Shown here in pieces: positions 1 to 64,000 of a DNA stretch of 64,000 nt. The first letter of the stretch is position 1. Every line of letters starts with the position of its first letter. Below the pieces are notes generated by a model. The model was not told the origin of the DNA. It was given only the letters and a program-made list of their open reading frames with translations, and ran no database searches. The translations under genes and the position numbers were made by a program. The DNA is taken from IMG/VR virus record IMGVR_UViG_3300027668_000008, positions 1-64,000 of that record. One strand, written 5' to 3'.

Positions 1-294
1 ATAGTATACATTGTACATTATAAGTAACATATTGAATTATATACAATACTATATAAACACAGTATGATATATGCAATACTATATAATCATATTGTACTCG
101 AAAGAGTGCATACTGTAGTAGTGACTACGTCTACTATAGTACAGGTTTAATACGTTACTAGTGTAGACATATCCATCACACGTTATATAACCCTAGAAGA
201 CTATAAGTTTATTTACTAGTATACTAGTAGCGGAACTAAAGGGTTGAAAAGGTGTTGCCAAAACCTAAAAAAGTTGACCAGCGATTTGATTGCG

Positions 295-360
295 CCAGGG
301 TAAGGAATCACGGTGGGGCCAAAACGTAGCCCCCTGGGCCTGAAATATAATTCTTTTTTT
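295..360 (+). other. GC-rich stem-loop followed by a T-tract (terminator-like or structured element)
   Basis: GGGGC(315-319)/GCCCC(329-333) stem with a 9-nt loop; outer CCAG(295-298)/CTGG(334-337); TTCTTTTTTT follows at about 351-360. Confidence 0.4.
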
Positions 361-454
361 ATTATTCTGAGTTTACTCTAATACTAGTATAGCATATAGC
401 ATAGATTCAATATTAGGGGTCTACAGTGTACATACACTGCTAGTACTAGTACTA

Positions 455-727
455 CTATGCATAGGGACTACCTACTATATCAATAGCCCACTGATCCCAA
501 GGCTCTGTTGTTGTAGCCTTCAAACAGTTAGTCTCTGTAGTAAGACCTGGTGCTAGTACATCATTCTCTAGTATACTAGTAATAGTATTGACTTCACTCT
601 CATCATCACTGTCTACCCATAGCACACCATGTGCCCATTCCATCTTAGGAGCACAACTCTGCAGGTTATCAGTAAAGTAATCTTGTATAGTAGTAATACT
701 CGTTTGCTCTATGTTATCATATGACAT
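455..727 (-). CDS. Small acidic hypothetical protein (early gene)
   Basis: 90-aa ORF with AAAGGAG RBS, directly downstream of a TTGACA/TATAAT promoter at 761-788. Confidence 0.75.
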   Translation of the reverse strand: MSYDNIEQTSITTIQDYFTDNLQSCAPKMEWAHGVLWVDSDDESEVNTITSILENDVLAPGLTTETNCLKATTTEPWDQWAIDIVGSPYA

Positions 728-760
728 ATGTATGCTCCTTTAAAGTTAACTTATACTATA

Positions 761-788
761 ATTATAACACAACTAGACGTACTGTCAA
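761..788 (-). promoter_or_regulatory. Sigma70-type early promoter
   Basis: Minus strand TTGACA-N16-TATAAT with TG extension, then TATAAGTTAA leader and AAAGGAG RBS. Confidence 0.8.
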
Positions 789-797
789 CCGGTTATT

Positions 798-953
798 TTA
801 TAATAAGTCGATTTCTAATTCAGATAAACACACAACTACGGCTTGACTAGGTGATGTTGTTACGTTATAACTAATGCAGGCATTACTGGCTTGATCGAAT
901 GTAGAGAAAAAGAGTGTAGTTTGTGTTGCGAAGTCGACGATTGCGTACTGCAT
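798..953 (-). CDS. 51-aa hypothetical protein (MQYAIVDFATQ...), not in the ORF track
   Basis: ATG at 953 with AGGAG RBS, TAA at 798-800; lies between two promoters. Confidence 0.6.
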   Translation of the reverse strand: MQYAIVDFATQTTLFFSTFDQASNACISYNVTTSPSQAVVVCLSELEIDLL

Positions 954-991
954 AGAGTATCTCCTGTTTGTTTAACTTAACTTATACTACT

Positions 992-1218: not shown

Positions 1219-2523
1219 ATGACGAAACCCAATAAGAAAAGCCCTACACACTGTATGTTACCATGGATTCATTCGCATACTAGTGCTAATGGAACCTTCA
1301 AACCATGTTGTAATGCCATGGGCAGTGATCAACCACTGTGGACCAGTGATGCAAATGATGAAAGCACGTGGTATAAACAGGATCCTAACGCTACTAATGT
1401 AGCAAGAGCCGGCGATAGTATGAGTATAAGACGTAACAACATGACATTAAGTGAGTGGTTCACTAGTGCTTACATGGATAAACTACGCAATGACCTTGCT
1501 AATGGTGTACAAAACCCTATGTGTGGAAGGTGTTGGAGAGATGAAACTCGTAGTGGTACTAGTATAAGACAAAGATATAACAGTAAGTATGAACATCATA
1601 CCACTGTTGAACCCTCAATCTCATACCTAGACCTCAAGTTAACCAACCAATGTAACCTCAAGTGTAGGATGTGTGGCCCAAGTGACAGTAATTTAATAGC
1701 ACAAGACATAGTAGAACTAGAATCCCGGGGGTTGACAGTGCCCGTTAACTATGCTAATGCCTTCGGCCCTAGGAGAAGAAGCCATGCAGATACCAATTAC
1801 ATCGGAGGTTTGCCGGCAAGTACACTAGAAGACATTGAACATCTACTACCACAGTTAACACAACTTAAAGTAACCGGTGGTGAACCAACGCTACAACCAG
1901 AAGTACTACGCTTGTTCGATAGATGTATAGACAACAAGTATGCAGAAAACATTGAACTACACGTTACTACCAATGCTACCAAGTTTACAACAAAGTTTCT
2001 TGAACGTATAGAGCAATTTAAGAACACAAGATTCAATATAAGCGTTGATGGTTATGGTACAACATACAATTACATACGCTATCCCTTTACATGGGACAAG
2101 TTTAATGCTCGTATACAGTTACTAGAAAGTAGATACACTAGTAGTACTACAATACATTGGGCCTATACTTGTGTACCACAGATGTTTAACATAGAGAACA
2201 TACATAAACTACAACAACGAGTAGGGTCAGAACATTTATATGTGAACAATGTGCTACACCCTGACGGTATATACAACAGTTTAGACATAGTACCTGAACA
2301 TATACTAGTATACGCACTAGAGAACATAGAGTATGTTGAAGGTCAAAGTGATATTTTAATTAATTATATTAAAACATTATTAAATGATTATAAGCCCGTG
2401 ACTAAGAGTAGACTAGCAGACATGGTAAAGAGTGTTACTAGTGTAGACATACTACGCAATCAGCACTACAGTGAGTGTTTAGACCCCTTAACAGTGAAGT
2501 TTATAACTGAATCAGCATTGTAG
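1219..2523 (+). CDS. Radical SAM enzyme with N-terminal twitch/SPASM-like domain (class A, #1)
   Basis: N-terminal CMLPW..PCC..CGRC; CNLKCRMC (CxxxCxxC); TGGEP; C-terminal DxxR. Confidence 0.9.
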   Translation: MTKPNKKSPTHCMLPWIHSHTSANGTFKPCCNAMGSDQPLWTSDANDESTWYKQDPNATNVARAGDSMSIRRNNMTLSEWFTSAYMDKLRNDLANGVQNPMCGRCWRDETRSGTSIRQRYNSKYEHHTTVEPSISYLDLKLTNQCNLKCRMCGPSDSNLIAQDIVELESRGLTVPVNYANAFGPRRRSHADTNYIGGLPASTLEDIEHLLPQLTQLKVTGGEPTLQPEVLRLFDRCIDNKYAENIELHVTTNATKFTTKFLERIEQFKNTRFNISVDGYGTTYNYIRYPFTWDKFNARIQLLESRYTSSTTIHWAYTCVPQMFNIENIHKLQQRVGSEHLYVNNVLHPDGIYNSLDIVPEHILVYALENIEYVEGQSDILINYIKTLLNDYKPVTKSRLADMVKSVTSVDILRNQHYSECLDPLTVKFITESAL

Positions 2524-2910
2524 ACGGTTGTAATGGACATACCTTGAGAAACGGAAGCGACAGAAAGGCATACCTCAGCGACTCGAACCGACCTATAAGA
2601 AAAATTCTACACCCTAGATTCACTAGCACTACTAGTGTAATTAAATGAATTTACTTGCTCTTTGGTTGTTTCTCTAGTATAATGAGTACTATAAGCAGTG
2701 CTAAATAGTAGTGCGTATACTAGTTCTATAGTGTGTGCTTTCCCCATGCAAACTTTAACTACTATACAACTGTATACTATAATGTGAATTAAATCATTTA
2801 TTATTTTTAGTTCTCTACTAGTGTAAAACAAACCTGTACTAGTGTAGAACAGAGTAAATAACAATACTATTAGAGTAACAATGCTAACTATCAATTACAA
2901 GAGAACATAG

Positions 2911-4509
2911 ATGTCAAAACTGGACAACCCATACGATAAAACACAATTTACTACTAATCCACTAGAACCTTTAAGTGTACTATCATTAAAAGAACGCAAA
3001 GCAAACAAATGGTTTGATGCTGAAGGCAACACTATGTTTCAATATGAACGTGTTAAACGTTTAGAATTGGAATTCAATAATACTTGTTTCTTATACTGTG
3101 GAGGTTGTGGACGTACATTTAATCCAGAACTAGAGAAAGCAGGTAAGAAACTAATCATGCTTAAAGACGTTAAAAAGTTCTTCCCACCCGAATTTTGTGC
3201 TCAACTGCATTATTTTTTAAGTTGCGGTAACTATGGTGATCCAACAGCACATCCAGAGACACTAGACATACTACGTTGGTTTAGAACAAATGGAACAAAG
3301 AACGTAAGCATAAGTTCAAACGGAGCAAGTCGTAGTCCTGAATGGTGGGCTGAACTGGCTGGCATCATCAATGGAGAAGGTGGAAGCCGTGATGATATTA
3401 AAAACTATTACGGCGGTAGAGTTACCTTTAGCATTGACGGACTAGCAGACACCAACCATTTATACCGTGTGGGTGCAAAATGGGATAGGATAGTGGAAAA
3501 TGTTACTGCGTTTATTAATGCAGGAGGCAGAGCTAGATGGCAATGGATTATGATGAACCATAATGAACACCAATTAGAAGAAGCAAAAGCATGGGCTAAA
3601 GAAATAGGCTTTAGTGAGTTTATAGAAAAGGTTAGTTTTAGATATAACCCCATACGTTTAAGCAAACGTGAAGCAGAGAAACTAGCAGAAGACCAAGAGT
3701 TTGAAATGCTTAAAGACCGTAGTTTAAAGCAGGAGGAACTGCGAAAAGACGTTAGTATGAAATTTGAGCTTACCGACGCTAATGCGGCACTGAGTGCCCG
3801 AGCCGCCAAGCAAGGTGGCACCGAATTGAGCCCAGTTAATGTAAGTGTTAATCCAGAGAATCAACATCCTTATAGAGAAAAGATTAAAGGCATACACGAA
3901 CGTACAAGCAAGACTGCTAAAAAGTTTTGGAGCACTAAACAAAACATTATATGTCAAAACATAGGTGATCCAAGGATATATGTTGATGCAACAGGTAAAG
4001 TATGGCCCTGCAATTGGTTAGGTGGAATAGAGTTTTATGAAAATAAGGACAAGCATTGGCCTCTACCAAGTTATAAGAAGTATGGTATAGATGATCAATG
4101 GAACAGTTTATATAACTTTGCAGACGACGATAATCCAGTTAGAAGCATACTAGAACATCCTTTTTATGAGTATTTGTTAGAAGAAGATTGGAAACATAGT
4201 AGTGAAATGCAACCTGCTAAATGTAAACAAATGTGTCATACAGAGCTAGGTGATGGTATATTTGAAAGTATGAGACGTAATGAACAGAATTTAAAAACTG
4301 GTGAGTATAAAGACATCAGCGAAATACATGATACAGGTATTACTAAAGATGGTGGTCAAGTTGTTATGGCTCCAGAAGGTCAAAAGACTGGACGCTTTAA
4401 ACATCAAGGCGGAACAGGTATTGGTCCTGGCAGTAACAAGGCTGTAGAAGGATTAGATCAAAGCATACTAGATATTGAAACAATAGATGAAGACACCAAC
4501 GAATCATAA
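2911..4509 (+). CDS. Radical SAM enzyme with C-terminal SPASM/twitch domain (class B, #2), with an insertion and a Gly-rich tail
   Basis: CFLYCGGC; GNYGDP in place of GGEP; C-terminal C..VWPC..CKQMC. Confidence 0.9.
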   Translation: MSKLDNPYDKTQFTTNPLEPLSVLSLKERKANKWFDAEGNTMFQYERVKRLELEFNNTCFLYCGGCGRTFNPELEKAGKKLIMLKDVKKFFPPEFCAQLHYFLSCGNYGDPTAHPETLDILRWFRTNGTKNVSISSNGASRSPEWWAELAGIINGEGGSRDDIKNYYGGRVTFSIDGLADTNHLYRVGAKWDRIVENVTAFINAGGRARWQWIMMNHNEHQLEEAKAWAKEIGFSEFIEKVSFRYNPIRLSKREAEKLAEDQEFEMLKDRSLKQEELRKDVSMKFELTDANAALSARAAKQGGTELSPVNVSVNPENQHPYREKIKGIHERTSKTAKKFWSTKQNIICQNIGDPRIYVDATGKVWPCNWLGGIEFYENKDKHWPLPSYKKYGIDDQWNSLYNFADDDNPVRSILEHPFYEYLLEEDWKHSSEMQPAKCKQMCHTELGDGIFESMRRNEQNLKTGEYKDISEIHDTGITKDGGQVVMAPEGQKTGRFKHQGGTGIGPGSNKAVEGLDQSILDIETIDEDTNES

Positions 4510-7702: not shown

Positions 7703-8766
7703 ACATAGATAAAATTAACTACATGATGATAGAGTTTACATCGGCTTGTAATGCCAGATGTCCTGCTTGTGCAAGAACACAGCACTTTGTTAACAGTGGA
7801 ATAACTCCTCATGGTAGTAGACAAATAACAATGGACCATATGAAGAATCTTTTTGGTATCAAATGGCCCAATTTAAGAAAACTTAATATTGATGGCAACT
7901 ATGGTGACAGTATGTATCACCCACACAGTTTAGAATTATTGGAATACATCGCTGACACACAAGATGCATCTAAGATTAAGTTATACATTGATTCCAATGG
8001 AGGCTACAAGAAGCCTGAGTTTTGGACAAAGTTGGGCGACTTAATGAAACGTTTTCATCCTACAAGTTGTATTACATTCGGCATCGATGGAATAGATCCA
8101 GAAATGCATGCCAGGTACAGAGTAAGAGTAGACTTAAACAAAGTATTTGAAAATGCTAAAGCGTTTATCGATAATGGTGGCAACGCTGAATGGAAATGGA
8201 TTGGCTTTGATTATAATGATCACCAATTGGAAGATGCTAAACGTATGAGTAAAGAAATGGGGTTCAGTGCGTTTATATATAAAAATACTAGAGTAAGACA
8301 TAGTATTATACGTGAAGCAATGGGTCTACAAGACTTAGACAAGGGTGTTAGTGCTACGAGTAAGAATGTTAACAGTACAATTAGTCAAGAGATAGTTGCA
8401 CAAGCAAAGAAAGAAATTAAAAGTGTTAAAGACTTTGCTAACGATAGTACAATACATTGTAGGTTCCGTAGGGAAAAGAACTATGGATTTCAAGTAGAAC
8501 ACAGTGGCAGAATATATCAATGCTGTCATTTACCTGGGTACTATAATTACCAACAACCTGGCACTGAGATTTATAAAGAATATGAATATTATACAAATAA
8601 ATACAACACTAACTGGAACAGTTTAGACGAACACGGAATAATGGATATATTAAATCACCAATACTTCCAGCACGACTTAACAGACAGTTTTAATAACAGA
8701 ACAGATGCAACTGAAAACCCTAGAATAAACAGATGTATTTCAAAATGCGGATCAATTGATGCTTAA
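7693..8766 (+). CDS. Radical SAM enzyme, C-terminal SPASM (class B, #4)
   Basis: CNARCPAC; GNYGDS; C..YQCC..CISKC. Confidence 0.9.
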   Translation: MALDIDKINYMMIEFTSACNARCPACARTQHFVNSGITPHGSRQITMDHMKNLFGIKWPNLRKLNIDGNYGDSMYHPHSLELLEYIADTQDASKIKLYIDSNGGYKKPEFWTKLGDLMKRFHPTSCITFGIDGIDPEMHARYRVRVDLNKVFENAKAFIDNGGNAEWKWIGFDYNDHQLEDAKRMSKEMGFSAFIYKNTRVRHSIIREAMGLQDLDKGVSATSKNVNSTISQEIVAQAKKEIKSVKDFANDSTIHCRFRREKNYGFQVEHSGRIYQCCHLPGYYNYQQPGTEIYKEYEYYTNKYNTNWNSLDEHGIMDILNHQYFQHDLTDSFNNRTDATENPRINRCISKCGSIDA

Positions 8767-29282: not shown

Positions 29283-30398
29283 CTAGGCGTTATGACTGGC
29301 TTTGATATACTTACCAAACCTGTCATAAAACTCTTTGTAATTCTTTAAATACTTAGGTCGTAATGGTATCTTGTAAGTAACCAATGCCGCCCTTGCACCA
29401 AGTACAACCATTTCAGTTTCAAAGTTATCCATCATAAACCTAAAGAAGTTATCTGCAAGTTTGTGGAATTTCTCAATACCTTTTGTACCTTCTTTTTCGT
29501 ATGCTTCACGTAATTCGTAACACATAGAAACAGTAAGTGAATACCTACCTGAGATTTCAACACTTGAATCCAGTGTCTTAACCTTGCCTGCAAGTACATC
29601 ACTTGGGTTAGGAAGTTTGCCACTGTTCTTTAAAGTAGCCATAAACTTAACACCAACGCCTTCACCAACTGCACCTGAAACTAGGTTTGCTAATGTTTCT
29701 TCGTCCATGTCATCATCGTCAATTAAGTCACTAACGAATGTCCAAGAACGAGGAGTTGCAAATGAACGACTTGAGCTACGTGGATCAAAGTCAAACAAGT
29801 CCTGCTTGTGAACTGTTATGTGACCAATAACATCTGAATGTATGTTATTATTGATTGCCCAGTTTAACCAAGACTCATAATCAACACGCATTTCTAAGTG
29901 AACGAACCTGTTTGCCAACGGTGCTGGCATCCTGTAAGTAACACCTTTATCAGTCTCCCTGTTACCTGCGGCAACAATAACTACGTTACTTGGAAGTTGA
30001 TATTTACCAACACGGTTATTAAGAACTAATTGGTAAGCCGCCGCCTGTGTACTTTGCGGAGCAGAGTTAAGTTCGTCTAAGAACAATACAACTGTATCAT
30101 ATTGTTTAGCCAACTCAGGACTTGGAAGGTCAACCGGTGGTGCCCAATCCATAACGCCTAATTCTTTATTGTAAAACGGAATACCTTTAATATCAGTTGG
30201 CTCCATTAGTGCCATACGCAAGTCAATTAGCAATGCGTTTCCAATATCACCAGAATCAACAATGCCTTGCATCAGTTCTGATTTACCAATTCCCATAGGT
30301 CCCCAAAGGAACACAGGTCGCTTTTTAGCGAATGCTTTGAGTATAGCCTTGTTAGCGGCAATACTTGTTACGGTCCTATTTTCTGTTAATTGTGACAT
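29283..30398 (-). CDS. MoxR-like AAA+ ATPase
   Basis: GPMGIGKS Walker A; LFLDE Walker B; AAGN; NRFVH. Confidence 0.9.
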   Translation of the reverse strand: MSQLTENRTVTSIAANKAILKAFAKKRPVFLWGPMGIGKSELMQGIVDSGDIGNALLIDLRMALMEPTDIKGIPFYNKELGVMDWAPPVDLPSPELAKQYDTVVLFLDELNSAPQSTQAAAYQLVLNNRVGKYQLPSNVVIVAAGNRETDKGVTYRMPAPLANRFVHLEMRVDYESWLNWAINNNIHSDVIGHITVHKQDLFDFDPRSSSRSFATPRSWTFVSDLIDDDDMDEETLANLVSGAVGEGVGVKFMATLKNSGKLPNPSDVLAGKVKTLDSSVEISGRYSLTVSMCYELREAYEKEGTKGIEKFHKLADNFFRFMMDNFETEMVVLGARAALVTYKIPLRPKYLKNYKEFYDRFGKYIKASHNA

Positions 30399-36477: not shown

Positions 36478-37383
36478 TTATGTTCCTATTGCATTTCCAA
36501 ACAAGTAAACGTGTACTCTTGCCGCTACATTGTAGCCACGTTTAAATGCCTTTTCAGCCACTGCACCTGCAGTAGTTGTTTGTTCTTCTTCCCTTGCACC
36601 TGTGGGCATAACCCAAATGGGCCAATCAACACCAGCGTCTTTAAACTTTGCTATTGCTTGTTCCATTTCTTCCCACTCTCTTTCTTTGTGTCCAACTACA
36701 AATTTAAGTTGTCCTTTACTAGAAAGTTCTCTATACTGCTTAACTATTTCTGGCTTAATAGCCTTCTCAGGTTTCTCACCTGATACTGTAAATAGTTTAG
36801 GACTACAAGAAAAGAATATTTCTATATCAATTCTGTTTACCCATTCAACAAACTCGGGTAGTAATTTTTGCGTACCATTTGTTTCAAATGTCATACTAGC
36901 AGGCAAGTTACCTTGTCTTTCAAGTTCTTCATATATACCAATTGTCGCCCGTTGTCCAGTAACCATCAAAGGTTCGCCACCTGTAATACATAAGTGCTGT
37001 CTTTGTTGTGTAACAGGATGTAGGAACAACCCTTCCGGATTGCTCTCATTTTTCATAACGTTAATAATCTTTTGTGCTAACACTGTGGGAGTTTCTTCTC
37101 CCATTAGTTTTTTAAACTTCTTTGCCCAGGTGTAACTACTGTCACAACCTTTATCCCAAACAGGTAAATCTTCTACACGTGATACACTATCAACATCAAA
37201 GTCTTCAAACGGTAATTCGTAAGTGTCAGGTTTTGTAGGATCTATTTGTCCAAATCCATTACACTGTAAGTTACACATGAAGAAACGTATCCAAGCAGTA
37301 GGAACACCTGTGTAATTCCCTTCGCCTTGTATACTATGAAATATCTCCGAATAGTAATACTTCTTTTCTTGTGTTACTGCCAT
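36478..37383 (-). CDS. queE: 7-carboxy-7-deazaguanine synthase (radical SAM)
   Basis: YSEIFHSIQGEG..G.P..WIRF..CNLQC...CDS; ITGGEP; ETNG; R.HV.LFG. Confidence 0.92.
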   Translation of the reverse strand: MAVTQEKKYYYSEIFHSIQGEGNYTGVPTAWIRFFMCNLQCNGFGQIDPTKPDTYELPFEDFDVDSVSRVEDLPVWDKGCDSSYTWAKKFKKLMGEETPTVLAQKIINVMKNESNPEGLFLHPVTQQRQHLCITGGEPLMVTGQRATIGIYEELERQGNLPASMTFETNGTQKLLPEFVEWVNRIDIEIFFSCSPKLFTVSGEKPEKAIKPEIVKQYRELSSKGQLKFVVGHKEREWEEMEQAIAKFKDAGVDWPIWVMPTGAREEEQTTTAGAVAEKAFKRGYNVAARVHVYLFGNAIGT

Positions 37384-37388: not shown

Positions 37389-37838
37389 TTAACCTTTGTA
37401 AATTGCACTATTGGCACCATGCTCGGCACATTCAACTTTTACACAATAACATCTATTGTTTGTTGCTTCACGGATAAGTTTATCTGCAAAGTTAAAGGCG
37501 TGTTCGGCAAACTTCTCTGCACCAACACCGTCCATTACTACAATCTCTGCCAAGTCAAGTTCTTGTAGTTCCATAAACTTGTCCATGTGTGGATCGTCTT
37601 TGTCGATTGCTGTCTTGTGATCAAAGTTATCTTCTAACCATTTCTTCAAAGGTTTAAGTCCCCCAAAGTCTACTGCCCAGTTCTTTTTATCAAGTTCGCT
37701 ACAGCCAAAAGTAAATGTAAATGCTAAACTGTAACCATGTAGTAAATGACAATGGCTATGGTCTGCGTTAGGTTGTCTAAATACTGCCGACAATCCAATG
37801 TTATGTCCGTAATGCTTTGTGCTAAAATATTGTCCCAT
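37389..37838 (-). CDS. queD: 6-carboxytetrahydropterin synthase
   Basis: HCHLLHGY; DFGGLK; FDHK; terminal E..ANSA.Y. Confidence 0.88.
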   Translation of the reverse strand: MGQYFSTKHYGHNIGLSAVFRQPNADHSHCHLLHGYSLAFTFTFGCSELDKKNWAVDFGGLKPLKKWLEDNFDHKTAIDKDDPHMDKFMELQELDLAEIVVMDGVGAEKFAEHAFNFADKLIREATNNRCYCVKVECAEHGANSAIYKG

Positions 37839-44980: not shown

Positions 44981-45589
44981 TTATTTTAACTTGTATTTCT
45001 TTTGTAGATGCTTGAGTAACAGACCATATGCTGGTAAGAATATGATTAAGCCTACTGCAATTTTAATTACAACTTGTGAACCTGCAATCTCAATCCAATT
45101 TGCCGCCATATATTCATCAGCACCGTTGTTAAATGCAACTGCAAAGAATGTGTAAGTATCGATGATGTTTGCCGCCACAGTTGATACCGCAGGTGCCAAC
45201 CACCAATTGTTCTTAAATCCTTCTCTGATGTATTGGAATACATATACATCAAGTAATGTACCTACTGCGTATGCAGTAGCACTTGCAAAGCCAATTCTTA
45301 ATGCAACAGATCCTGGTGCACCTTCGGCTAGTACAACTGCTATAGATCCAATAATTGCTAACGGATATGCCGCCGCAATAGTTTGCCTTGCAATGCTTTT
45401 GCCTAGTAACCTAACAGTTAAGTCTGTTGCAATTACTACTAATGGGAACGTGAATGCCGCCCATGTTAATTTTACTCCAAATATCTCTACTGGAATACCG
45501 ACCAATGCATTTGATACTGTAATCACAATAACGTGTAGTGCTACAAGTTTCATCAACATAGTTTTGTCTACGTTCTTAAAGTTAAACAT
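44981..45589 (-). CDS. yhhQ: Queuosine-precursor transporter (YhhQ/VUT family)
   Basis: VSNAL..P....TW.AFTFP...ATDLTVR..G...AR; RIG.ASA.AY..G.LLDV.VF; DTY.FF..AF. Confidence 0.88.
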   Translation of the reverse strand: MFNFKNVDKTMLMKLVALHVIVITVSNALVGIPVEIFGVKLTWAAFTFPLVVIATDLTVRLLGKSIARQTIAAAYPLAIIGSIAVVLAEGAPGSVALRIGFASATAYAVGTLLDVYVFQYIREGFKNNWWLAPAVSTVAANIIDTYTFFAVAFNNGADEYMAANWIEIAGSQVVIKIAVGLIIFLPAYGLLLKHLQKKYKLK

Positions 45590-47136: not shown

Positions 47137-47823
47137 CTATCTAGGAGCAAACTCCTGTTGTAGTTTAATGTTATCGAAGAACTCTTGCTTTGTACCAGCG
47201 TCATTTGTAAATGCACCTTTAAGTACTGTAGTTTGTGTTAAACTACTGTGTGCCATAATGCCACGATTCTCACAACAACCATGTGTTGCTTGAATGTAAA
47301 CACCCACGTCTTCACTTCCAGTTGCATTCATAATTTCTCTAGCGATATTATTACAAAGTTCTTCTTGCAGTGTGCCACGTCTTGCACACCACTGAGCTAT
47401 ACGAGTGTATTTGCTCAACCCAATCAATTTCTCTGCCGCAAGTATTCCTATGTATGCGACACCAGTTACTGGTTGGTGGTGATGAGAACAGACACTTTTA
47501 AGTTCACTACGAACCACCAAAATACCTGTGTATGCATCTGCCATCTCTTGTGGAAATGCAGTTGCATTAGGCTTTGGAAAATAGCGTCCACTCATCAATT
47601 CGTTAATATACATTTTAGCAAGACGTCTACCAGTGTCGTTACTGTTAGGATCATTTTCTCTATCAATAAGCAAACTATCTAGTACACTACTGAACTTAGG
47701 TGTAAGTTCTTCGATTAGTTTCTCAGTATCACCATCTTCAAGATACTTGCTAATGTTATCTCCAGCCCAATAACGTCCTTTATCAGCCTGGATTCTTTTT
47801 TTAATTTCTTCACTTATACTCAT
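47137..47823 (-). CDS. folE: GTP cyclohydrolase I
   Basis: T..RLAKMY; SVCSHHHQP; GLSKY.RI; QE.L; HGC...RG. Confidence 0.95.
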   Translation of the reverse strand: MSISEEIKKRIQADKGRYWAGDNISKYLEDGDTEKLIEELTPKFSSVLDSLLIDRENDPNSNDTGRRLAKMYINELMSGRYFPKPNATAFPQEMADAYTGILVVRSELKSVCSHHHQPVTGVAYIGILAAEKLIGLSKYTRIAQWCARRGTLQEELCNNIAREIMNATGSEDVGVYIQATHGCCENRGIMAHSSLTQTTVLKGAFTNDAGTKQEFFDNIKLQQEFAPR

Positions 47824-49532: not shown

Positions 49533-49539
49533 TTTTATC

Positions 49540-50138: not shown

Positions 50139-50143
50139 TTTTC

Positions 50144-50605: not shown

Positions 50606-50649
50606 TGTTGTTACTTTCTATATTATTATAGTATAGTTGTTTTCGAATG

Positions 50650-50823: not shown

Positions 50824-50840
50824 ATTATACCCTCCTAAGG

Positions 50841-55514: not shown

Positions 55515-58172
55515 TTATTCAAAACTAAACAAATCATTAAATTTAGTGTTAGTATTGGAATCTAGCGTCAAGTCCCACCCCAATACGTCTAATAGGTTGT
55601 TAATCTTACTGTCAATTACAGTGCTTTCCATTGCACTATCATCAAACGGTAATTCTTTAAACCATTGTGGCAAATGCGGTTCATCAACTGGATAAGCCAC
55701 ACTAGTGTATCCTAGTGGATTTGCCTTCATTTTACAAACAATAACTTTGTGACCGTCTTTGATCTCGGTACTATATCTGTCACTGTTCATCTTTCGCAAT
55801 CTATTCCAGTTCATACTAGCTCTGACGTGTCCTGGCATATTTGCTCTTCCTTGCCGCTGTTCAAGTGCTTGGAATTTTGTCATGTTATTTGCACGTCTTG
55901 GGCTACCTTTTTCCCAACCTTGCTTTTGCATGAATTCTTCTTTAAACAACTTTACTTTCTCAAGTGCAGTATCTCTATCATCGCCAGTTAACACTCCTGT
56001 TAAGATGTTACTAAGAAAGTCTTGTACAATCTTAGGTGTATCTGACCGTTTAAGGTCAAGTCCCATTGCTTTAATCTTTCCCGGACTGTCTTTATCTGTG
56101 CGATATCCTTCGTTGTCGTATATAAGTAATGCATAACGTTTCTTTGTAATAAACAAACCTTTGGTTGCACATACTTCTCTACCACCAACAATAATCTCTC
56201 CATTTTCCCTAGGTGCATTAAAAGCCTTCTTCATAAAGCCTGGAAAACTTTCGTTAACTTTGTCGCTAATAGAATCATATAAAGCAGTACAAGTATCTTT
56301 GTTCCACTCTAATTCACCTTTCTCAACACGTTCTTTAAGAACGGGCCATGCACTAAAGTATGCAGAGTCTGTGTCACCATATATAATAGTTTCACCTCTA
56401 TGATCATACACGCCTGTTAAACATTCATTAACATATGCGTCCATGTGTTTTGCAATACTTCTGCCACACAATGTAGTACTTTGTCCAATACGTTTATCAA
56501 AGAATCTACAACCTGGATTAAGAATCGCACCATATAAACTGTTCAAGTTAATCTTTTTAACTAACTGTCGTTTATCCCAAAACTGTTTCTCTTCCGGAGT
56601 TGTTGCACTTGCTTTTACTTTTTGTATATCTTGTCGTTCTCTGTACCAACGTGCTAATAGTCCAGGTACAACACCTTCTATTTGCGAATTAAATATAGTA
56701 CCATTTGCACTTAACATCCAAGGTTTTTTACTTAAAAATATAAGTTTATAGATCTCTTTACCAGACATTATATCATGCGAACCGTTTTCCCATTCAAGTA
56801 CAATTTCTTTTTCGATGTCTTGTGACATAACTAGTTCATATTCGATACTACCAAACATACCTTCCCAAGAATCTGCAAAACTCTTCTTGTCAGCCATGCT
56901 ATCTTTAACGTGTCGGTCTGTGTAGTCCGGACGCAACTGTCCTACAATAGTTTCATTTCCCATGTTAAGAGCACGAATAGCCGAAGGATACAAACTGTTA
57001 ATATCAATACTACCAATCCAATCATGCAATCCTTTTTGTGGGTATGCCACATACGCACCAGCCGCCTGTGTGTTACCAAGTTCATCTCTACTCTTACGAC
57101 TTGGAACAACTAACCCACGTTCGTGTGCTTCGTTAATAATTGCTTGTTCTGTAACTGCGACAGCACCCATTGTTGTTTGTAACAACACTGTATTACTGTG
57201 TGCTAGTTCACTACTCAACTCCATAAATTTTAATTTCTTATCTAGTTTATCTAGTAGTGCAGTATCCTGTCTCGAATATTCAATAAACGTTTCAAAGTCA
57301 TTGTTATATAATTGATCCAGTGTGCCTGTGTATTGAACTTTGCGTTCATCTAATTCATATTCACCAATAGCATCTAAACTGTAACTATGCATTTCGTGGT
57401 ATGTATACTTACGATACAGTTGCATATAGTCCATGTGTACACGACCAATAGTATCAAACGTTAGTGTTTCACTACCAAATCGTTCAAACGTTCTCGACTT
57501 GGGTAATGCACCCCATAAACAAAAACGTCTTGTATCATCTTTACTCAGTACACGTTTAACTCTGTTTACCAAATACGGAATATCATAACCTTCACTGTTC
57601 CAACCAGATAAAATATCTGCATCATCAATAAGTGTTAAGAATGTATCTAGTAATTGCGACTCTTGTTCAAAGAAGAAACAGTTTTCATACTTTGCACAAA
57701 CCTTATCGCTTTCTTCCTTACTCATTCCTTTAGGCGGAATTGCAAGTGTTATAAGTTGATCAGTCCATTGTAAGTACAAACTAATTGCAGTTACAGGATT
57801 AAACGGATCCTCAGGCGGAGAGAAACCTCGTTCCTTATCGAAGTCAGTCTCAATATCAAAGAAACAAGTGTGCAACTTAGGTGCTTCTTGTCCTAGATAG
57901 TTTTCTTCTAAAATACGGAATACAGGATTAAAGTCGCTTTCATAAAGTCGCTTTTGTCCTACTAGTTTTATTTCTCTACGGAAATCTTTTATCGAACGGC
58001 ACTGGATTCTACTAACAGTGTTGCCGTGGATACTTTTATGTTTACCTTTCGGATCATCATAATAGAATACATATTTTGCGGGATAATCTTTATACACACG
58101 TTTACCGTGCTTATTTCGTTCGACTATTTGTATTAAGTCCTTGTCTCTATCAAAGAGTGCATCAACGTACAT
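55515..58172 (-). CDS. Family B DNA polymerase (T4 gp43-like)
   Basis: FFDIETD, WNSEGYD, YSRQD (3'-5' exonuclease); DINSLYPS, KINLNSLYG, YGDTDS (polymerase). Confidence 0.97.
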   Translation of the reverse strand: MYVDALFDRDKDLIQIVERNKHGKRVYKDYPAKYVFYYDDPKGKHKSIHGNTVSRIQCRSIKDFRREIKLVGQKRLYESDFNPVFRILEENYLGQEAPKLHTCFFDIETDFDKERGFSPPEDPFNPVTAISLYLQWTDQLITLAIPPKGMSKEESDKVCAKYENCFFFEQESQLLDTFLTLIDDADILSGWNSEGYDIPYLVNRVKRVLSKDDTRRFCLWGALPKSRTFERFGSETLTFDTIGRVHMDYMQLYRKYTYHEMHSYSLDAIGEYELDERKVQYTGTLDQLYNNDFETFIEYSRQDTALLDKLDKKLKFMELSSELAHSNTVLLQTTMGAVAVTEQAIINEAHERGLVVPSRKSRDELGNTQAAGAYVAYPQKGLHDWIGSIDINSLYPSAIRALNMGNETIVGQLRPDYTDRHVKDSMADKKSFADSWEGMFGSIEYELVMSQDIEKEIVLEWENGSHDIMSGKEIYKLIFLSKKPWMLSANGTIFNSQIEGVVPGLLARWYRERQDIQKVKASATTPEEKQFWDKRQLVKKINLNSLYGAILNPGCRFFDKRIGQSTTLCGRSIAKHMDAYVNECLTGVYDHRGETIIYGDTDSAYFSAWPVLKERVEKGELEWNKDTCTALYDSISDKVNESFPGFMKKAFNAPRENGEIIVGGREVCATKGLFITKKRYALLIYDNEGYRTDKDSPGKIKAMGLDLKRSDTPKIVQDFLSNILTGVLTGDDRDTALEKVKLFKEEFMQKQGWEKGSPRRANNMTKFQALEQRQGRANMPGHVRASMNWNRLRKMNSDRYSTEIKDGHKVIVCKMKANPLGYTSVAYPVDEPHLPQWFKELPFDDSAMESTVIDSKINNLLDVLGWDLTLDSNTNTKFNDLFSFE

Positions 58173-60952: not shown

Positions 60953-60988
60953 TGTTTATTCCTATTGTATAAAGTATTTATCACTTTA

Positions 60989-61276
60989 TTAGTTTGTATG
61001 TATCTCAACGATTAGGTCATTAACACCTTTAATAATCCTGTGATATACTTCCTTGGGTATAAAATGGGTCTCGCCCATTACTAAAACTTTAGGAATACTG
61101 TTATCCATTTGTAGTTGCCAACCATCACTGCTGATAACTTTAATAGTACGGTCTTCGTTATCTCGATGCCATACTAAGTCGTCTTCCCAGATTGTCTCTG
61201 GAAATGTCCTAATTTTTCTATTGTTTGAAATTGTTTTCTCTACGAAAGGAAAAACATTACCACCAAGTTCCGCCAC
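60989..61276 (-). CDS. Small cupin-like protein
   Basis: LVWHRD..DR; W.LQMD; IPK..YHR.IKG. Confidence 0.6.
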   Translation of the reverse strand: MAELGGNVFPFVEKTISNNRKIRTFPETIWEDDLVWHRDNEDRTIKVISSDGWQLQMDNSIPKVLVMGETHFIPKEVYHRIIKGVNDLIVEIHTN

Positions 61277-61832
61277 CAGATAATCCTAAACTTTTTGCAT
61301 AACGTGGTAAACGACAACTCCAGTATCCTGCTTTAGTTTTATCATTCTTGTTTTCGCAATCATGTCTGTCTTTAAATGCTTTTTTAGCCTTAGGGTCTTT
61401 TAGTTTAACTGCAAGATTACCGCCGCCACCTGCCGCACCGAATGATACTTTAATTGTGTTACCTTTTTTGTTCTTTGTGTATACATAGAACTTTTTACTA
61501 CCACCACGTTTGGGTTTATTTAAATCTACTTTTTTACCTTGATACTCTGCTTCGTGGACATTCATGTTGTCTTCACTAATAATCATATCTAAAGGAACTC
61601 TGCCATGTTCTTTTAAGTTAACCCATTCACCCAGTTGTGTGTCACGAAGAATCTCTTCATCAAACCAATGTAAGTCGTTTAACTTACCTTCTGTGTAAAG
61701 AGACCTTGCTTCTTTAAACATATTAAAGTACTCATCACTACCTAAACGAAAGACGCTTTCGTGCAGTGGAGTATTAGATTTTAGGTGATATTGTACACCT
61801 TCGGAAATGGGTAATAATTCTGTATATTTCAT
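61257..61832 (-). CDS. Phage protein, DUF6321-like
   Basis: KKFYVY....KVSFG..RH.C....K.KAGYWSC. Confidence 0.6.
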   Translation of the reverse strand: MKYTELLPISEGVQYHLKSNTPLHESVFRLGSDEYFNMFKEARSLYTEGKLNDLHWFDEEILRDTQLGEWVNLKEHGRVPLDMIISEDNMNVHEAEYQGKKVDLNKPKRGGSKKFYVYTKNKKGNTIKVSFGAAGGGGNLAVKLKDPKAKKAFKDRHDCENKNDKTKAGYWSCRLPRYAKSLGLSGGGTWW

Positions 61833-61840
61833 ATTAGTAT

Positions 61841-62551
61841 TTAGTTCAAGACTTTGTTAAAGTAGTTTGCTAGAGCCTTGTGTCCTTGCTGATTAGGGTG
61901 TTGCGTGTTATCAAATAGTTTACTAGTCATACTAAAGTCTGTTCTTTCGAAGTGTGCTTTACGCCAGTTACTGTCTACATTTTTATCTAGCCATGCTTGT
62001 CCAAACGTATTAGGTTCTTGTAAATATCCTAATTCATATACTGGACAGTCGTACATAAAGTATCTTTGCTTTTCTTCGAAGTACAATACATTAATTAAAC
62101 TGTGTGGCAAGAATGTTTCTTGTTTTCTCCAAAATTCTGTATCTTCAAATACAGGTATAAAGTGTACTGGGCAATCCCATACTTGAGCCACTATACATTC
62201 AATTGCATGAAAGTTATATAACGAATAGTCCATAACATTCTTTACAGTTACATTGTCATCAAACACTCTCTTTTGTGCATCTGCATACCACGGGTCTGGG
62301 TGTTGTGATATACAAAGTTCACTATTAACACTGATGTTTATAGTCATTCTGTTAATACTAGTAAATGCAATTATAACTGCTTCAACATCTTCGTCTGGAT
62401 AATCAAGACTTGCTTCACTTACTTGATCTGTTATTTGTCTGTTACTGGCACCAGCTCGTGCAAAGTTTTTACAGTCCTTGTCTAGTAATTCGGGCCACGG
62501 TGTGTGGTCTTGCCACTTTGCAGTCCAACTGTCACCAAACGTGAATATCAT
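61841..62551 (-). CDS. SGNH/GDSL hydrolase-like protein
   Basis: FGDSWT; ARAGASN; DNTQHPNQQGH. Confidence 0.7.
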   Translation of the reverse strand: MIFTFGDSWTAKWQDHTPWPELLDKDCKNFARAGASNRQITDQVSEASLDYPDEDVEAVIIAFTSINRMTINISVNSELCISQHPDPWYADAQKRVFDDNVTVKNVMDYSLYNFHAIECIVAQVWDCPVHFIPVFEDTEFWRKQETFLPHSLINVLYFEEKQRYFMYDCPVYELGYLQEPNTFGQAWLDKNVDSNWRKAHFERTDFSMTSKLFDNTQHPNQQGHKALANYFNKVLN

Positions 62552-63267
62552 GTTACATACTCTGTAAAGATACTTAACCCTGTTTTTTCTTCCATACCGT
62601 TTTCTAAAAAATTACTAGCACAATGTAGTCTAGCACAATCAAATATAATAGCATCACCTGGTACCCAAGGGCATTCTGATTCAATACTAAAACCTTCTAA
62701 CCATTCTTGTTTCATATGTCCTGTATCTGTATTAGGTATTCTATTGTCTTGATGTAAGTTATGTACTCCGGAGTATTCAAATATAGGCTCATTGCCTTTC
62801 TCATACATTTGTGCTGAATCTTTATTCTTAAAACACTTTACTGGTCTATCGAAATACATTTGATCAAATATGTAAAATTTTGCGTCATCTAACATAGGAA
62901 GTTGGTATGTTGTGTATACTTTTTCTAAAGGCAATACAATACATTTACCCGGAATAATAGCATGATCTTTAGGAACATCATTATGGAGTATGTGTGGTTT
63001 CCTTACTGTAAAGTAATTACCACCGAATGGTTTAATTTTTGCATCTAGTACACTTTCAACACGTTTCATTATGTTTTGATAATGATGATCACTTTTATGA
63101 GGTAACTTACTAACAACAGGACCTGTGTTCTTAAACACCTTCTCATGGTCCGGTCTATCTTTATGTATGTTTAGTAAGTGTATTTGTTCAACTTCGGATA
63201 AGAAGTTTTTAATTGTGATTGTCGGTGAAGTGTTGTCTATTATTTGCTGTTGTCGTTCGTTGAGCAT
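62548..63267 (-). CDS. 2OG-Fe(II) oxygenase-like protein
   Basis: LHNDV (HxD); GDAIIFD..RLHC. Confidence 0.55.
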   Translation of the reverse strand: MLNERQQQIIDNTSPTITIKNFLSEVEQIHLLNIHKDRPDHEKVFKNTGPVVSKLPHKSDHHYQNIMKRVESVLDAKIKPFGGNYFTVRKPHILHNDVPKDHAIIPGKCIVLPLEKVYTTYQLPMLDDAKFYIFDQMYFDRPVKCFKNKDSAQMYEKGNEPIFEYSGVHNLHQDNRIPNTDTGHMKQEWLEGFSIESECPWVPGDAIIFDCARLHCASNFLENGMEEKTGLSIFTEYVT

Positions 63268-63407
63268 TGTTTACATCTACACTGTTTGCAGACTTCAATT
63301 TGTCTGTATTCTGCTGGTTGTTCGCTAGGGTAGTCTTTTTCTTCTCGCCATAACGGACTTCCACAATGGCTGTGGTGTCCACAATTTTGACAAGAATTAG
63401 AAGTCAT
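63240..63407 (-). CDS. 55-aa Cys/His-rich miniprotein, not in the ORF track
   Basis: CQNCGHHSHCG...CKQCRCKQC. Confidence 0.6.
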   Translation of the reverse strand: MTSNSCQNCGHHSHCGSPLWREEKDYPSEQPAEYRQIEVCKQCRCKQCSTNDNSK

Positions 63408-63413
63408 TGTAAC

Positions 63414-64000
63414 TTATAATCCTGATAGGTATTTAATTCTATCTAACTCTACACTCTCGTTTACATCAGCGGCTAGTTTTTGCTTGTCGCCTTCGAGTTC
63501 TTTAGCAAGAGCAGGATCGGCTTTGTATTTGTCCGAACCAGATATAAATCTTTGGTATGCTATACTGTTTACTTTTTTATCAGCAAGTGTTACTAACATT
63601 TGTTCCATTTCTTTAACTCCAATTGAGTCACCTGTGTATTCTGACACTGGTCCTTCTGTTTCAGCAACACTATGGTCACCTTTTTTATTCATCATACCAA
63701 ATACTAGGTTTGTTACTTTAATCATACCTGCTTTAGTACCCATCATGCCAAGTAACTTTGCTTGGTTTTGTGGATTAATCTTATCAAATACTTGTGTAAT
63801 AGCACTTGCACTATACAAGTCTACACTCATTTGTCCGTCTGCGAACTTAACAGGCATATTTTGCTTGTCTGCAACAATCTTTCTCAATGTATCTAATGCT
63901 ACATTACTATGTGTTGCTTGTTCATCTGGACTTGCTATTTCTGTAATTTTGTTTTGTGCATAATAGTCAATTATTTCTTGTGCAGTGTCAAACGATTCTT
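63414..64000 (-). CDS. C-terminal part of a larger protein running off the window edge
   Basis: Frame stays open from 63887 to 64000; ends ELDRIKYLSGL. Confidence 0.7.
   Translation of the reverse strand, partial: ESFDTAQEIIDYYAQNKITEIASPDEQATHSNVALDTLRKIVADKQNMPVKFADGQMSVDLYSASAITQVFDKINPQNQAKLLGMMGTKAGMIKVTNLVFGMMNKKGDHSVAETEGPVSEYTGDSIGVKEMEQMLVTLADKKVNSIAYQRFISGSDKYKADPALAKELEGDKQKLAADVNESVELDRIKYLSGL

What the first reader, a model, noticed from the sequence alone, without database searches (positions are those of the whole stretch)
1..64000. Apparent total avoidance of GCWGC, visible as forced GC-rich Ala-Ala codons
Seen: all of about 50 Ala-Ala junctions I checked use GCG-GCN or GCC-GCN (e.g. 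CAG GCG GCG GCT in the ATPase, ATT GCG GCG GCA in yhhQ), although lone Ala codons are mostly GCA/GCT. I found no GCAGC or GCTGC by eye; a rough independent-base estimate gives about 35 expected. GCSGC, GATC, GANTC, CCWGG and GTAC are all present. Established: GCWGC is the target of TseI/ApeKI-type restriction-modification systems. Inference: strong, specific selection by a host nuclease that deazaguanine does not block, or loss through m5C deamination, or self-protection from a phage-encoded nuclease. The motif fingerprints the host.
Basis: partly seen in the sequence, partly recalled or inferred. Interest (0 to 1): 0.75.

Follow-up and report, generated by a model that had tools for sequence, protein, structure and literature searches.

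The report
Marine jumbo phage purges restriction sites
A 307-kb marine phage genome contains no GCWGC at all (about 290 expected) and has erased several other short palindromes by synonymous recoding. This is a well-known way to escape bacterial restriction enzymes, here done very thoroughly and with one oddity: sites that abut a GG or GA step are spared.

Summary
GCWGC is absent from the window (0 against 48±4.5 under synonymous-codon shuffling). It is also absent from the whole 306,714-bp contig (0 against 293±9). All 341 Ala-Ala junctions use GCG or GCC first, and GCSGC is 2.9-fold enriched as the substitute.

GCWGC is not the only target. HAGCTD, HGCGCD, RCATGY, TACGTA and GCTAGC are also at or near zero, and CGCG, GGCC and GTGCAC are strongly depleted.

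Relatives found through PolB carry different mixtures of these purges. That is what selection by changing host restriction systems predicts. There is no excess of deamination products and no recognisable phage DNA methyltransferase.

One thing is new. Depleted palindromes survive when their boundary forms a GG/CC step (O/E about 1), and partly when it forms GA/TC (about 0.6). GCWGC and RCATGY are not rescued this way. This suggests a context-specific DNA modification at G-purine steps. The phage encodes FolE, QueD, QueE, a QueC-like protein and YhhQ, but no DpdA was found, so that part stays a hypothesis.

The phage is an uncultured marine jumbo phage, and its tmRNA points to an alphaproteobacterial host. 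Overall: a known kind of phenomenon, an extreme case, with an unexplained twist.

The parts
1..64000 (.). GCWGC-free stretch, part of a 306,714-bp contig that is GCWGC-free throughout
   Evidence: 0 sites against 47.8 +/- 4.5 (window) and 0 against 292.8 +/- 8.9 (genome); exact counts
45368..45379 (-).
   Evidence: pattern located; the gene is Vut_1/YhhQ, E 2e-25
30036..30047 (-).
   Evidence: pattern located; weak AAA / Sigma54_activat / AAA_5 matches
44981..45589 (-). YhhQ/Vut_1-family transporter (the family of the preQ0 transporter annotated in phage CAjan)
   Evidence: PF02592 E 2.3e-25; 94% identical in relative G002 and 52% in G003
47137..47823 (-). GTP cyclohydrolase I (FolE), first step towards preQ0
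   Evidence: PF01227 E 2.6e-37; phmmer against CAjan FolE 6e-17; conserved beside PolB in many relatives
37389..37838 (-). QueD / 6-pyruvoyl-tetrahydropterin synthase family
   Evidence: PF01242 E 1.3e-14
36478..37383 (-). QueE-like radical-SAM enzyme
   Evidence: phmmer against CAjan QueE 2.2e-8; 83% identical in G003; Pfam gives only a weak Fer4_12 match
8106..8111 (+). The only RCATGY site in the whole genome (GCATGC, followed by C)
   Evidence: 1 site against 162 +/- 9 expected
55515..58172 (-). Family-B DNA polymerase, used as the marker to find relatives
   Evidence: PF00136 / PF03104; at least 598 relatives in IMG/VR; 45-49% identical to the polymerases of Sinorhizobium phage Phosso and Agrobacterium phage Atu_ph07

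Best explanation
The window belongs to an uncultured marine jumbo phage of the T4 superfamily. The phage escapes its hosts' sequence-specific nucleases mainly by not carrying their target sites.

GCWGC is one of at least seven target families removed from the genome. It could be the site of a TseI/ApeKI-type enzyme or, equally, of a BbvI-type GCAGC enzyme; the two cannot be told apart because both strands are cleared. The other families are AGCT, GCGC, CGCG, RCATGY, TACGTA and GCTAGC, and GGCC, GTGCAC and others are partly removed.

Removal is by synonymous codon choice. For GCWGC this means GCG or GCC before another Ala codon, AGT and TGT after ..GC, and CAA between ..G and C... A phage carrying even one such site is presumably cut on entering a restricting host, so new sites are continually purged. 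This step is inferred.

Second layer, inferred with less confidence: the phage DNA carries a modification at G-purine steps (GG strongly, GA more weakly). It may be a 7-deazaguanine made by the phage's FolE-QueD-QueE-QueC-like pathway. This modification would shield restriction sites that contain or abut such a step. Sites without one, including GCWGC, would then be the ones that have to be deleted from the sequence.
For: Shown:
- Zero GCWGC against 293 +/- 9 expected, with GCSGC at 2.9-fold as the substitute. All three reading frames are cleaned synonymously.
- Parallel purges: HAGCTD 0/534, HGCGCD 0/91, RCATGY 1/162, TACGTA 0/79, GCTAGC 0/18. CCWGG, GTAC, TGCA, ACGT, TCGA and CCGG are at 0.97-1.08.
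- No deamination signature.
- On the PolB tree the window sits in a 100%-supported clade of 10. All ten have HGCGCD = 0. GCWGC is 0 in eight of them, with L004 at 7/22 and L010 at 1/15. HAGCTD is 0 in only five and RCATGY in only six.
- The 80-kb relative G002 repeats the window's whole pattern. The 83-kb relative G003 keeps GCWGC at 0/58 but has normal AGCT, and instead purges TGCA (21/312). Twelve of its 19 in-gene TGCA survivors are ATG-CAN, which Met-Gln/His forces.
- A cultured relative, Atu_ph07, avoids other sites: CCAGG 1/37 and CATG 54/207.
- No PF00145, PF01555, PF02086 or PF02384 DNA methyltransferase.
- Complete or near-complete site elimination is documented for about a tenth of viral genomes and is tied to orthodox Type II systems (PMC6286503).

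For the modification layer:
- Under the codon-shuffle null, boundary steps GG/CC give O/E 1.05 and 0.87, GA/TC give 0.62 and 0.58, and all other steps give 0.21-0.63.
- There is a dose response for 0 / 1 / 2 protecting flanks: AGCT 0 / 0.55 / 1.63, GCGC 0 / 0.49 / 0.99, CGCG 0.08 / 0.70 / 2.72.
- All 23 GTGCAC sites in G000 plus G002 are G-flanked.
- Every 6-bp palindrome with expectation of at least 12 that is purged to zero lacks an internal G-purine step.
- The rule repeats in relatives, but is absent from Atu_ph07's CATG avoidance.
- FolE, QueD, QueE and YhhQ are conserved in the clade.
- Known phage DpdA enzymes modify G in GA and GGC, and that blocks HaeIII and EcoRV (PMC7544227; PMC10484667).
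Against: - The host and its R-M systems are unknown, so no cognate enzyme has been shown for any purged motif.
- A methylation-dependent nuclease acting after host methylation would leave the same footprint.
- Against the modification layer, no DpdA/TGT was found. PF01702 gave nothing even at E <= 10, PF20314 gave nothing, and CAjan DpdA gave nothing by phmmer or tblastn. The QueC match is weak and partial.
- A 5' G does not rescue GCWGC (0 of about 75 expected flanked sites) or RCATGY (1 of about 52).
- GGCC and GATC always contain a G-purine step yet are still depleted when unflanked (0.16 and 0.55).
- A single CGCG|A flank does not rescue.
- Gene calls are crude longest-ORF calls, and the genome is estimated 87% complete.
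Confidence: 0.8

Rival explanations
1. The boundary (GG/GA) rule reflects intrinsic flank preferences of the host nucleases or their methyltransferases. Their effective specificities would be, for example, HAGCTD and HGCGCD, and no phage DNA modification would be involved.
For: No transglycosylase or DNA methyltransferase was found. Degenerate outer positions exist in real enzymes: the RCATGY pattern here is itself flank-dependent CATG. A 5' G does not rescue GCWGC or RCATGY.
Against: The same G-G / G-A boundary rule would have to hold for about ten unrelated specificities: AGCT, GCGC, GGCC, GATC, GTGCAC, AGATCT, CGCG, CAATTG, CGTACG/CTGCAG and CTTAAG. T-starting sites, which cannot form such a step, show no flank effect. 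Singly flanked sites are half depleted and doubly flanked ones not at all, which looks like graded half-site protection. Atu_ph07's CATG avoidance shows no such rule.
Confidence: 0.3
2. The selective agent is methylation-dependent (Type IIM/IV, BisI-like). Host GCWGC methyltransferases mark the phage DNA, and other hosts then cut the marked DNA. The phage would therefore be shedding the methylation target rather than a classical restriction site.
For: BisI-family enzymes cut G(m5C)NGC. GCWGC methyltransferases occur in environmental bacteria without an obvious partner nuclease. The sequence footprint would be identical.
Against: In a survey, elimination was essentially confined to orthodox Type II sites (PMC6286503). 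GCSGC, which BisI-type enzymes also cut when methylated, is enriched 2.9-fold here.
Confidence: 0.1
3. The phage encodes its own nuclease(s) that degrade host DNA at these motifs, and it protects itself by lacking the sites.
For: No direct evidence. Many of the roughly 380 ORFs are unannotated, so a nuclease cannot be excluded.
Against: Seven or more motif families vary independently among close relatives, which would need as many phage nucleases gained and lost. The cultured relative avoids yet other sites.
Confidence: 0.05
4. Passive decay: host m5C methylation of GCWGC followed by deamination erased the sites without selection.
For: GCWGC is an m5C target in known systems.
Against: Deamination products are not in excess: GTWGC/GCWAC O/E 0.93, GCWGT/ACWGC 1.05. 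The gains are transversion-type synonymous substitutes, GCSGC 1.8-4.3-fold and TCAGC 2.0-fold. Mutation pressure alone does not take about 290 sites to exactly zero. L004 shows sites re-accumulating (7/22) once the pressure is apparently gone.
Confidence: 0.02
5. A cause unrelated to defence, such as codon-pair bias, an RNA or regulatory motif, or an assembly artefact.
For: None found.
Against: The motif is absent in all frames, on both strands and in intergenic DNA. The avoided set consists of palindromes matching known restriction specificities. The same pattern appears in independent assemblies from other samples. Near-identical sequence occurs in at least 14 marine metagenome runs.
Confidence: 0.02

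Closest known systems
Restriction-site (palindrome) avoidance in lytic dsDNA phages (Rusinov et al. 2018, PMC6286503)
   Same: Short palindromic Type II sites are eliminated from a non-temperate dsDNA phage, the sets differ between lineages, and the removal is by synonymous recoding.
   Different: The scale: seven or more motif families at or near zero across 307 kb. The host is unknown. The boundary-step (GG/GA) dependence was not found in the literature I searched, which was one search only.
GCWGC systems (TseI, ApeKI, M.AspBS3I) and, from my own knowledge of REBASE, the Type IIS enzyme BbvI (GCAGC)
   Same: The avoided word is exactly their recognition sequence.
   Different: No such enzyme has been tied to this phage's host. 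The palindromic and Type IIS readings cannot be separated, since both strands are cleared.
Phages with 7-deazaguanine DNA (CAjan: preQ0 at GA and GGC; iggy: GA only; PMC7544227, PMC10484667, PMC6884629)
   Same: FolE, QueD, QueE and a YhhQ-type transporter are encoded. The inferred protected context is G followed by a purine, which resembles GA/GGC. In those phages, sites without a modified G stay cleavable.
   Different: No DpdA of any searched type was found. Here GG (with any third base) protects more than GA. This is a jumbo myovirus-like phage, not a Queuovirinae siphovirus. The modification itself has not been observed.
Agrobacterium phage Atu_ph07 and Sinorhizobium phage Phosso (closest cultured relatives, PolB 45-49%)
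   Same: Jumbo phages of the same broad group. Atu_ph07 also practises site avoidance (CCAGG 1/37, CATG 54/207).
   Different: The motifs differ. There is no boundary-step rescue in Atu_ph07's CATG avoidance, and AGCT, GCGC and GGCC are normal there.

Membership tests
Restriction-site avoidance | The site is significantly under-represented against composition-aware and codon-aware null models | tested here: met
   0 against 208-267 (Markov) and 0 against 293 +/- 9 (synonymous shuffle)
Restriction-site avoidance | The avoided word is a known R-M recognition sequence | tested here: met
   TseI / M.AspBS3I GCWGC; ApeKI methyltransferase. The assignments of the other motifs (AluI, HhaI, NspI, SnaBI, NheI, ApaLI types) rest on my own knowledge.
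Restriction-site avoidance | The host encodes the cognate R-M system | not testable with these tools
   The host is unknown. The only hints are an alphaproteobacterial-type tmRNA, the marine origin, and PolB relatives binned in MAGs.
Restriction-site avoidance | Avoidance varies among related phages in a motif-by-motif way | tested here: met
   GCWGC, AGCT, RCATGY, TGCA, GTAC and GGCC avoidance are distributed independently on the PolB tree.
Phage 7-deazaguanine DNA modification (DpdA systems) | preQ0 synthesis genes FolE, QueD, QueE, QueC | tested here: met
   FolE, QueD, QueE-like. QueC has only a weak, C-terminal match.
Phage 7-deazaguanine DNA modification (DpdA systems) | A DNA guanine transglycosylase (DpdA1-4 / TGT fold) | tested here: not met
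   PF01702 gave nothing even at E <= 10; PF20314 gave nothing; CAjan DpdA gave nothing by phmmer or tblastn. The genome is 87% complete, DpdA3-type proteins were not searched, and divergent DpdAs have been missed before (PMC10516641).
Phage 7-deazaguanine DNA modification (DpdA systems) | A modified base is present in virion DNA | not testable with these tools
   Only assembled sequence and contigs are available. The one raw-read Hi-C run had no coverage.
m5C deamination decay | Excess of C-to-T products of the lost site | tested here: not met
   GTWGC/GCWAC 0.93 and GCWGT/ACWGC 1.05 of order-3 expectation
Phage-borne R-M or methylation protection | The phage encodes a DNA methyltransferase | tested here: not met
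   PF00145, PF01555, PF02086 and PF02384 are all absent. Two small-molecule-type SAM methyltransferase-like ORFs beside the QueC-like gene remain uncharacterised.

The most novel reading that the evidence does not exclude
The genome's own k-mer statistics reveal a hidden, sequence-context-specific DNA modification. G (or its paired C) at 5'-GG-3' steps, and more weakly at 5'-GA-3' steps, would be modified by a pathway that uses the phage's preQ0 genes together with an unrecognised insertion enzyme. The genome would then be split into shielded restriction sites and sites that had to be deleted. If so, modification motifs of uncultured phages could be read from sequence alone, and this abundant marine jumbo phage clade would carry a new DpdA-like family.
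Probability: 0.33. Interest if true: 0.8.

Novelty: new variant of a known kind. Interest (0 to 1): 0.52.

Why it matters
Restriction-site avoidance is textbook, so the GCWGC gap by itself is an extreme example rather than a discovery. Two points give it more value.

First, the clade offers a natural experiment. Near relatives differ motif by motif, and one (L004) appears to be re-accumulating GCWGC. This can date and order encounters with host defence systems in an abundant, uncultured marine phage.

Second, the boundary-step rule is a quantitative, testable prediction of a context-specific DNA modification, or else of an unexpected shared property of many nucleases. If it holds, sequence alone could reveal modification motifs in metagenomic phages. 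It would also show how base modification and site deletion divide the work of evading restriction.

Tried and rejected
- Deamination hypothesis: tested and rejected.
- Hunt for a DpdA:
  - Pfam TGT, twice, and DUF6610, the DpdA4-like family.
  - CAjan DpdA by phmmer against all ORFs and by tblastn against all loci.
  - PHROGs and Pfam on neighbours of the que genes.
  - Atlas look-ups of three neighbouring unknowns. These gave only weak leads: DUF3800-like, a viral Rossmann methyltransferase-like fold, and WYL_2.
  - tblastn of four neighbours against phages, which found only a GT4 glycosyltransferase family.
  - Synteny with G003 showed no conserved unknown gene beside QueD/QueE.
  - No structure prediction was run, for lack of a good candidate.
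- A ThyA-type hydroxymethylase, which would point to pyrimidine hypermodification, is absent.
- Coding constraint as the cause of the flank rule: rejected for G000, because all contexts can be removed synonymously. It does explain the surviving TGCA sites in G003.
- A CAjan-like GGY rule: rejected, because the base after the GG step follows background frequencies except at CGCGGC.
- A Mom-like SASNY rule: considered and rejected. It would rescue C|AGCT, which is 0, and GCGC has no adenine.
- The Hi-C restriction-digest run, which might have shown which GATC sites are cuttable, had zero reads on the phage.
- Strain variants in 6 kb: none of the 40 creates a purged motif as a haplotype, but only about 1 was expected, so the test is weak.
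- Host identification from MAG bins (Haliscomenobacter, Chitinophagales, Polynucleobacter; 64-66% PolB) is judged unreliable.

Full report
**1. The observation**

The window holds no GCAGC and no GCTGC. GCSGC (63), GATC (148), GANTC (108), CCWGG (63) and GTAC (238) are all present.

- Expected GCWGC in the window is 50.7, 44.1 and 31.9 under Markov orders 1, 2 and 3.
- It is 47.8 +/- 4.5 when synonymous codons are shuffled within each gene.
- The window is the first 64 kb of a 306,714-bp single contig. This is an IMG/VR virus record estimated 87% complete, with 36% G+C.
- The whole contig also has zero GCWGC, against 267 (order 1), 208 (order 3) and 292.8 +/- 8.9 (200 codon shuffles, minimum 272).

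All 341 Ala-Ala junctions (55 in the window) start with GCG or GCC, whereas 88% of other Ala codons are GCA or GCT.

The other two frames are cleaned as well. AGT and TGT are always used after a codon ending in GC, and CAA is always used between ..G and C... GCSGC is 2.9-fold over-represented (400 against 137), which is the footprint of the substitution.

**2. GCWGC is not alone**

A scan of all words and degenerate motifs and the codon-shuffle null give:

| Motif | Observed | Expected |
|---|---|---|
| HAGCTD | 0 | 534 |
| HGCGCD | 0 | 91 |
| RCATGY | 1 | 162 |
| TACGTA | 0 | 79 |
| GCTAGC | 0 | 18 |
| CGCG | 52 | 125 |
| GGCC | 138 | 291 |
| GTGCAC | 16 | 48 |

CCWGG, GTAC, TGCA, ACGT, TCGA and CCGG are at 0.97-1.08 of expectation. 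The genome therefore carries a broad, selective purge of short palindromes. All of them are words that I recognise, from my own knowledge of REBASE, as Type II specificities: AluI, HhaI, FnuDII/BstUI, NspI, SnaBI, NheI, HaeIII and ApaLI types. TseI for GCWGC is confirmed in the literature.

**3. What the genome is**

- The family-B polymerase (55515-58172, minus strand) is 45-49% identical to those of Sinorhizobium phage Phosso and Agrobacterium phage Atu_ph07. It is about 41% identical to the E. coli 121Q group of jumbo phages.
- The contig has 8 tRNAs.
- It also has a permuted tmRNA that matches Rfam alpha_tmRNA at 107 bits. This, together with the hosts of the nearest isolates, points to an alphaproteobacterial host.
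- A 6-kb stretch is held almost word for word by at least 14 marine metagenome runs from 2017-2024 and by metatranscriptomes. This is therefore a widespread marine phage.
- PolB relatives at 64-66% identity sit in freshwater MAG bins of Haliscomenobacter, Chitinophagales and Polynucleobacter. I do not trust these as evidence of host.

**4. Relatives**

At least 598 IMG/VR contigs encode a related PolB. Motif counts in the 80 loci fetched, placed on a PolB tree, show a mosaic. The window lies in a 100%-supported clade of ten.

- All ten have HGCGCD = 0.
- GCWGC is 0 in eight of them. L004 has 7/22 and L010 has 1/15.
- HAGCTD is 0 only in the window, L003, L006, L004 and L005.
- RCATGY is 0 in the window, L003, L006 and L007-L009, but is normal in L004 and L005.

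Outside the clade most lineages avoid nothing. Isolated ones avoid GCWGC (L038 0/19, L020 0/15), AGCT (L080 3/38) or GTAC (L069 0/35).

Two longer relatives were read in full.

- G002 (80 kb, 91% PolB identity) repeats the window's pattern, with GCWGC 0/60.
- G003 (83 kb, 72%) has GCWGC 0/58 and RCATGY 0, but normal AGCT. It has an extra purge of TGCA (21/312).
- Twelve of G003's 19 in-gene TGCA survivors are ATG-CAN, which Met-Gln/His forces. Removal there goes as far as the proteins allow.

The cultured relative Atu_ph07 avoids yet other words: CCAGG 1/37 and CATG 54/207.

Avoidance that is inherited, labile and independent for each motif is what selection by a changing set of host R-M systems predicts.

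**5.

- **Deamination.** The C-to-T neighbours of GCWGC are not in excess (0.93 and 1.05 of order-3 expectation). The synonymous, transversion-type neighbours are in excess: GCSGC 1.8-fold by order 3 and 4.3-fold by order 1, and TCAGC 2.0-fold. This is rejected.
- **A phage nuclease with self-avoidance.** Nothing supports it. The mosaic would need many nucleases, and no DNA methyltransferase family is present (PF00145, PF01555, PF02086, PF02384).
- **A methylation-dependent nuclease of the BisI type.** This cannot be excluded, but it fits poorly with the GCSGC enrichment and with survey data.

**6. The boundary-step rule**

AGCT survives 123 times, always as GAGCT or AGCTC. GCGC survives 61 times, always as GGCGC or GCGCC.

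With the codon-shuffle null, the O/E values for 0, 1 and 2 protecting flanks are:

| Site | 0 flanks | 1 flank | 2 flanks |
|---|---|---|---|
| AGCT | 0 | 0.55 | 1.63 |
| GCGC | 0 | 0.49 | 0.99 |
| CGCG (3' G) | 0.08 | 0.70 | 2.72 |
| GGCC | 0.16 | 1.22 | 0.71 |
| GATC | 0.55 | 1.25 | 1.02 |

The rule extends to other sites.

- GTGCAC: all 23 sites in G000 plus G002 are G-flanked.
- AGATCT is favoured with a 5' G.
- CAATTG, CGTACG and CTGCAG are favoured with a 3' G.
- CTTAAG is favoured with a 3' A.

Pooled over depleted palindromes, boundary steps GG and CC give O/E 1.05 and 0.87, GA and TC give 0.62 and 0.58, and the other twelve steps give 0.21-0.63. T-starting sites, which cannot form such a step, show no flank effect.

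No 6-bp palindrome with expectation of at least 12 that is purged to zero contains an internal G-purine step.

The rule holds in relatives. Every AGCT in L003-L006 and every GCGC in 15 loci is G-flanked, and the G002 and G003 tables agree. In lineages that do not avoid AGCT, G-flanked AGCT is not enriched. Atu_ph07's CATG avoidance is flank-independent.

The surviving sites are spread over the genome and over reading frames, and all could be removed synonymously.

There are exceptions. A 5' G rescues neither GCWGC (0 of about 75 expected) nor RCATGY (1 of about 52). A single CGCG|A flank does not rescue either.

**7. Interpreting the rule**

Either about ten unrelated nucleases share a dislike of a neighbouring G-G or G-A step, or the phage's DNA is chemically different at such steps. 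The second reading is more economical, and it has a candidate source.

- The genome encodes FolE (47137-47823), QueD (37389-37838), a QueE-like enzyme (36478-37383), a YhhQ-family transporter (44981-45589) and a weak QueC-like PP-loop protein at G000:110987-111574.
- FolE, QueD, QueE and YhhQ are conserved in G003, with QueE at 83% identity.
- In phage CAjan, preQ0 replaces G in GA and GGC contexts and blocks EcoRV and HaeIII, while sites with G only in GC, GT or GGT contexts are still cut (PMC7544227). In phage iggy the context is GA only (PMC10484667).

GCWGC, AGCT, GCGC, RCATGY, TACGTA and GCTAGC all have every G followed by a pyrimidine.

The enzyme that would insert the base was not found. 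There is no TGT/DpdA even at E <= 10, no DUF6610, and no CAjan-like DpdA. All known deazaguanine phages do have one, although divergent families were overlooked at first (PMC10516641).

GGCC and GATC, which always contain a G-purine step, are nevertheless depleted when unflanked. Protection from an internal step would therefore have to be partial. I put this layer at about one in three.

**8. Verdict**

- The core interpretation, selection by host sequence-specific nucleases, is well supported. It is a known phenomenon in an unusually complete form.
- Specificity to GCWGC, deamination and self-nuclease protection are not supported.
- The host fingerprint remains unread because the host is unknown.
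- The boundary-step rule is the part that deserves follow-up.

**Caveats**

- Gene calls are crude longest-ORF calls (380 genes, 93% coding).
- Expectations depend on the null models, though all the nulls agree.
- Relatives are mostly fragments of about 20 kb.
- My single literature search for a flank-dependent avoidance rule does not establish that the rule is new.

Noticed in passing
window 1219-17958 (+): An operon of about 14 genes in which at least 10 products carry radical-SAM and/or SPASM domains. It could be a peptide-maturation or cofactor/modification cluster, and it is unusually large for a phage.
   Followed up: partly
G000:150481-150799 (-), outside the window: A permuted tmRNA of the alphaproteobacterial type (Rfam RF01849, 107 bits; RF04321, 113 bits). 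Its tag ends ...ALAA, written GCA TTA GCG GCT, so even here the GCUGC of the family consensus is avoided.
   Followed up: partly
G000:108544-128617 (-), outside the window: Eight tRNA genes: Gln, Leu, Trp, Arg x2, Ala, Ser, Thr. They flank a cluster made of a QueC-like PP-loop protein, a Methyltransf_11 protein and a 377-aa protein with a viral Rossmann methyltransferase-like lead.
   Followed up: partly
window 48438-53242 (-): A GT4-type glycosyltransferase (homologues in PA5oct-like Pseudomonas jumbo phages and in Phosso), a Zn-dependent dehydrogenase and a GFO/IDH/MocA oxidoreductase lie between FolE and PolB. This is a possible sugar-modification module with an unknown target.
   Followed up: partly
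This looks like a MoxR/VWA-like pair.
   Followed up: no
window 41035-44034 (-): A 999-aa subtilase-family protease (Peptidase_S8, E 1e-31).
   Followed up: no
G003 = record of L008 (L096-L100): This 72%-PolB relative purges TGCA (21/312). Twelve of the 19 in-gene survivors are ATG-CAN, which Met-Gln/His forces. It also strongly depletes CGCA/TGCG (14/191), which remains unexplained.
   Followed up: partly
L007-L011 (clade C relatives): G-flanked GGCC is depleted (4/19) while unflanked GGCC is not (51/38). This is the reverse of the window's pattern and looks like GGNCC avoidance.
   Followed up: no
window 52057-52062: In one marine metagenome strain, T>G at 52057 would by itself create GCAGC and CAGCTG. 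It is linked to C>A at 52058, so the haplotype reads GCAGA and no purged motif arises.
   Followed up: yes
window about 20000-21500: GC and AT skew change sign where gene orientation flips, from plus-strand genes (1-21.4 kb) to minus-strand genes. The skew tracks transcription direction.
   Followed up: no
L091 (Agrobacterium phage Atu_ph07, 190-240 kb): The cultured relative shows near-total loss of CCAGG (1/37) and 4-fold depletion of CATG in all flank contexts. It could serve as an experimental system for site avoidance in this phage group.
   Followed up: partly
G000 about 215-245 kb, outside the window: There is a local excess of GC-rich words (GCCGC 76 of 266, CCGCG 16 of 33, GCGCC 14 of 44), probably from Ala-rich proteins. 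The region was not examined.
   Followed up: no
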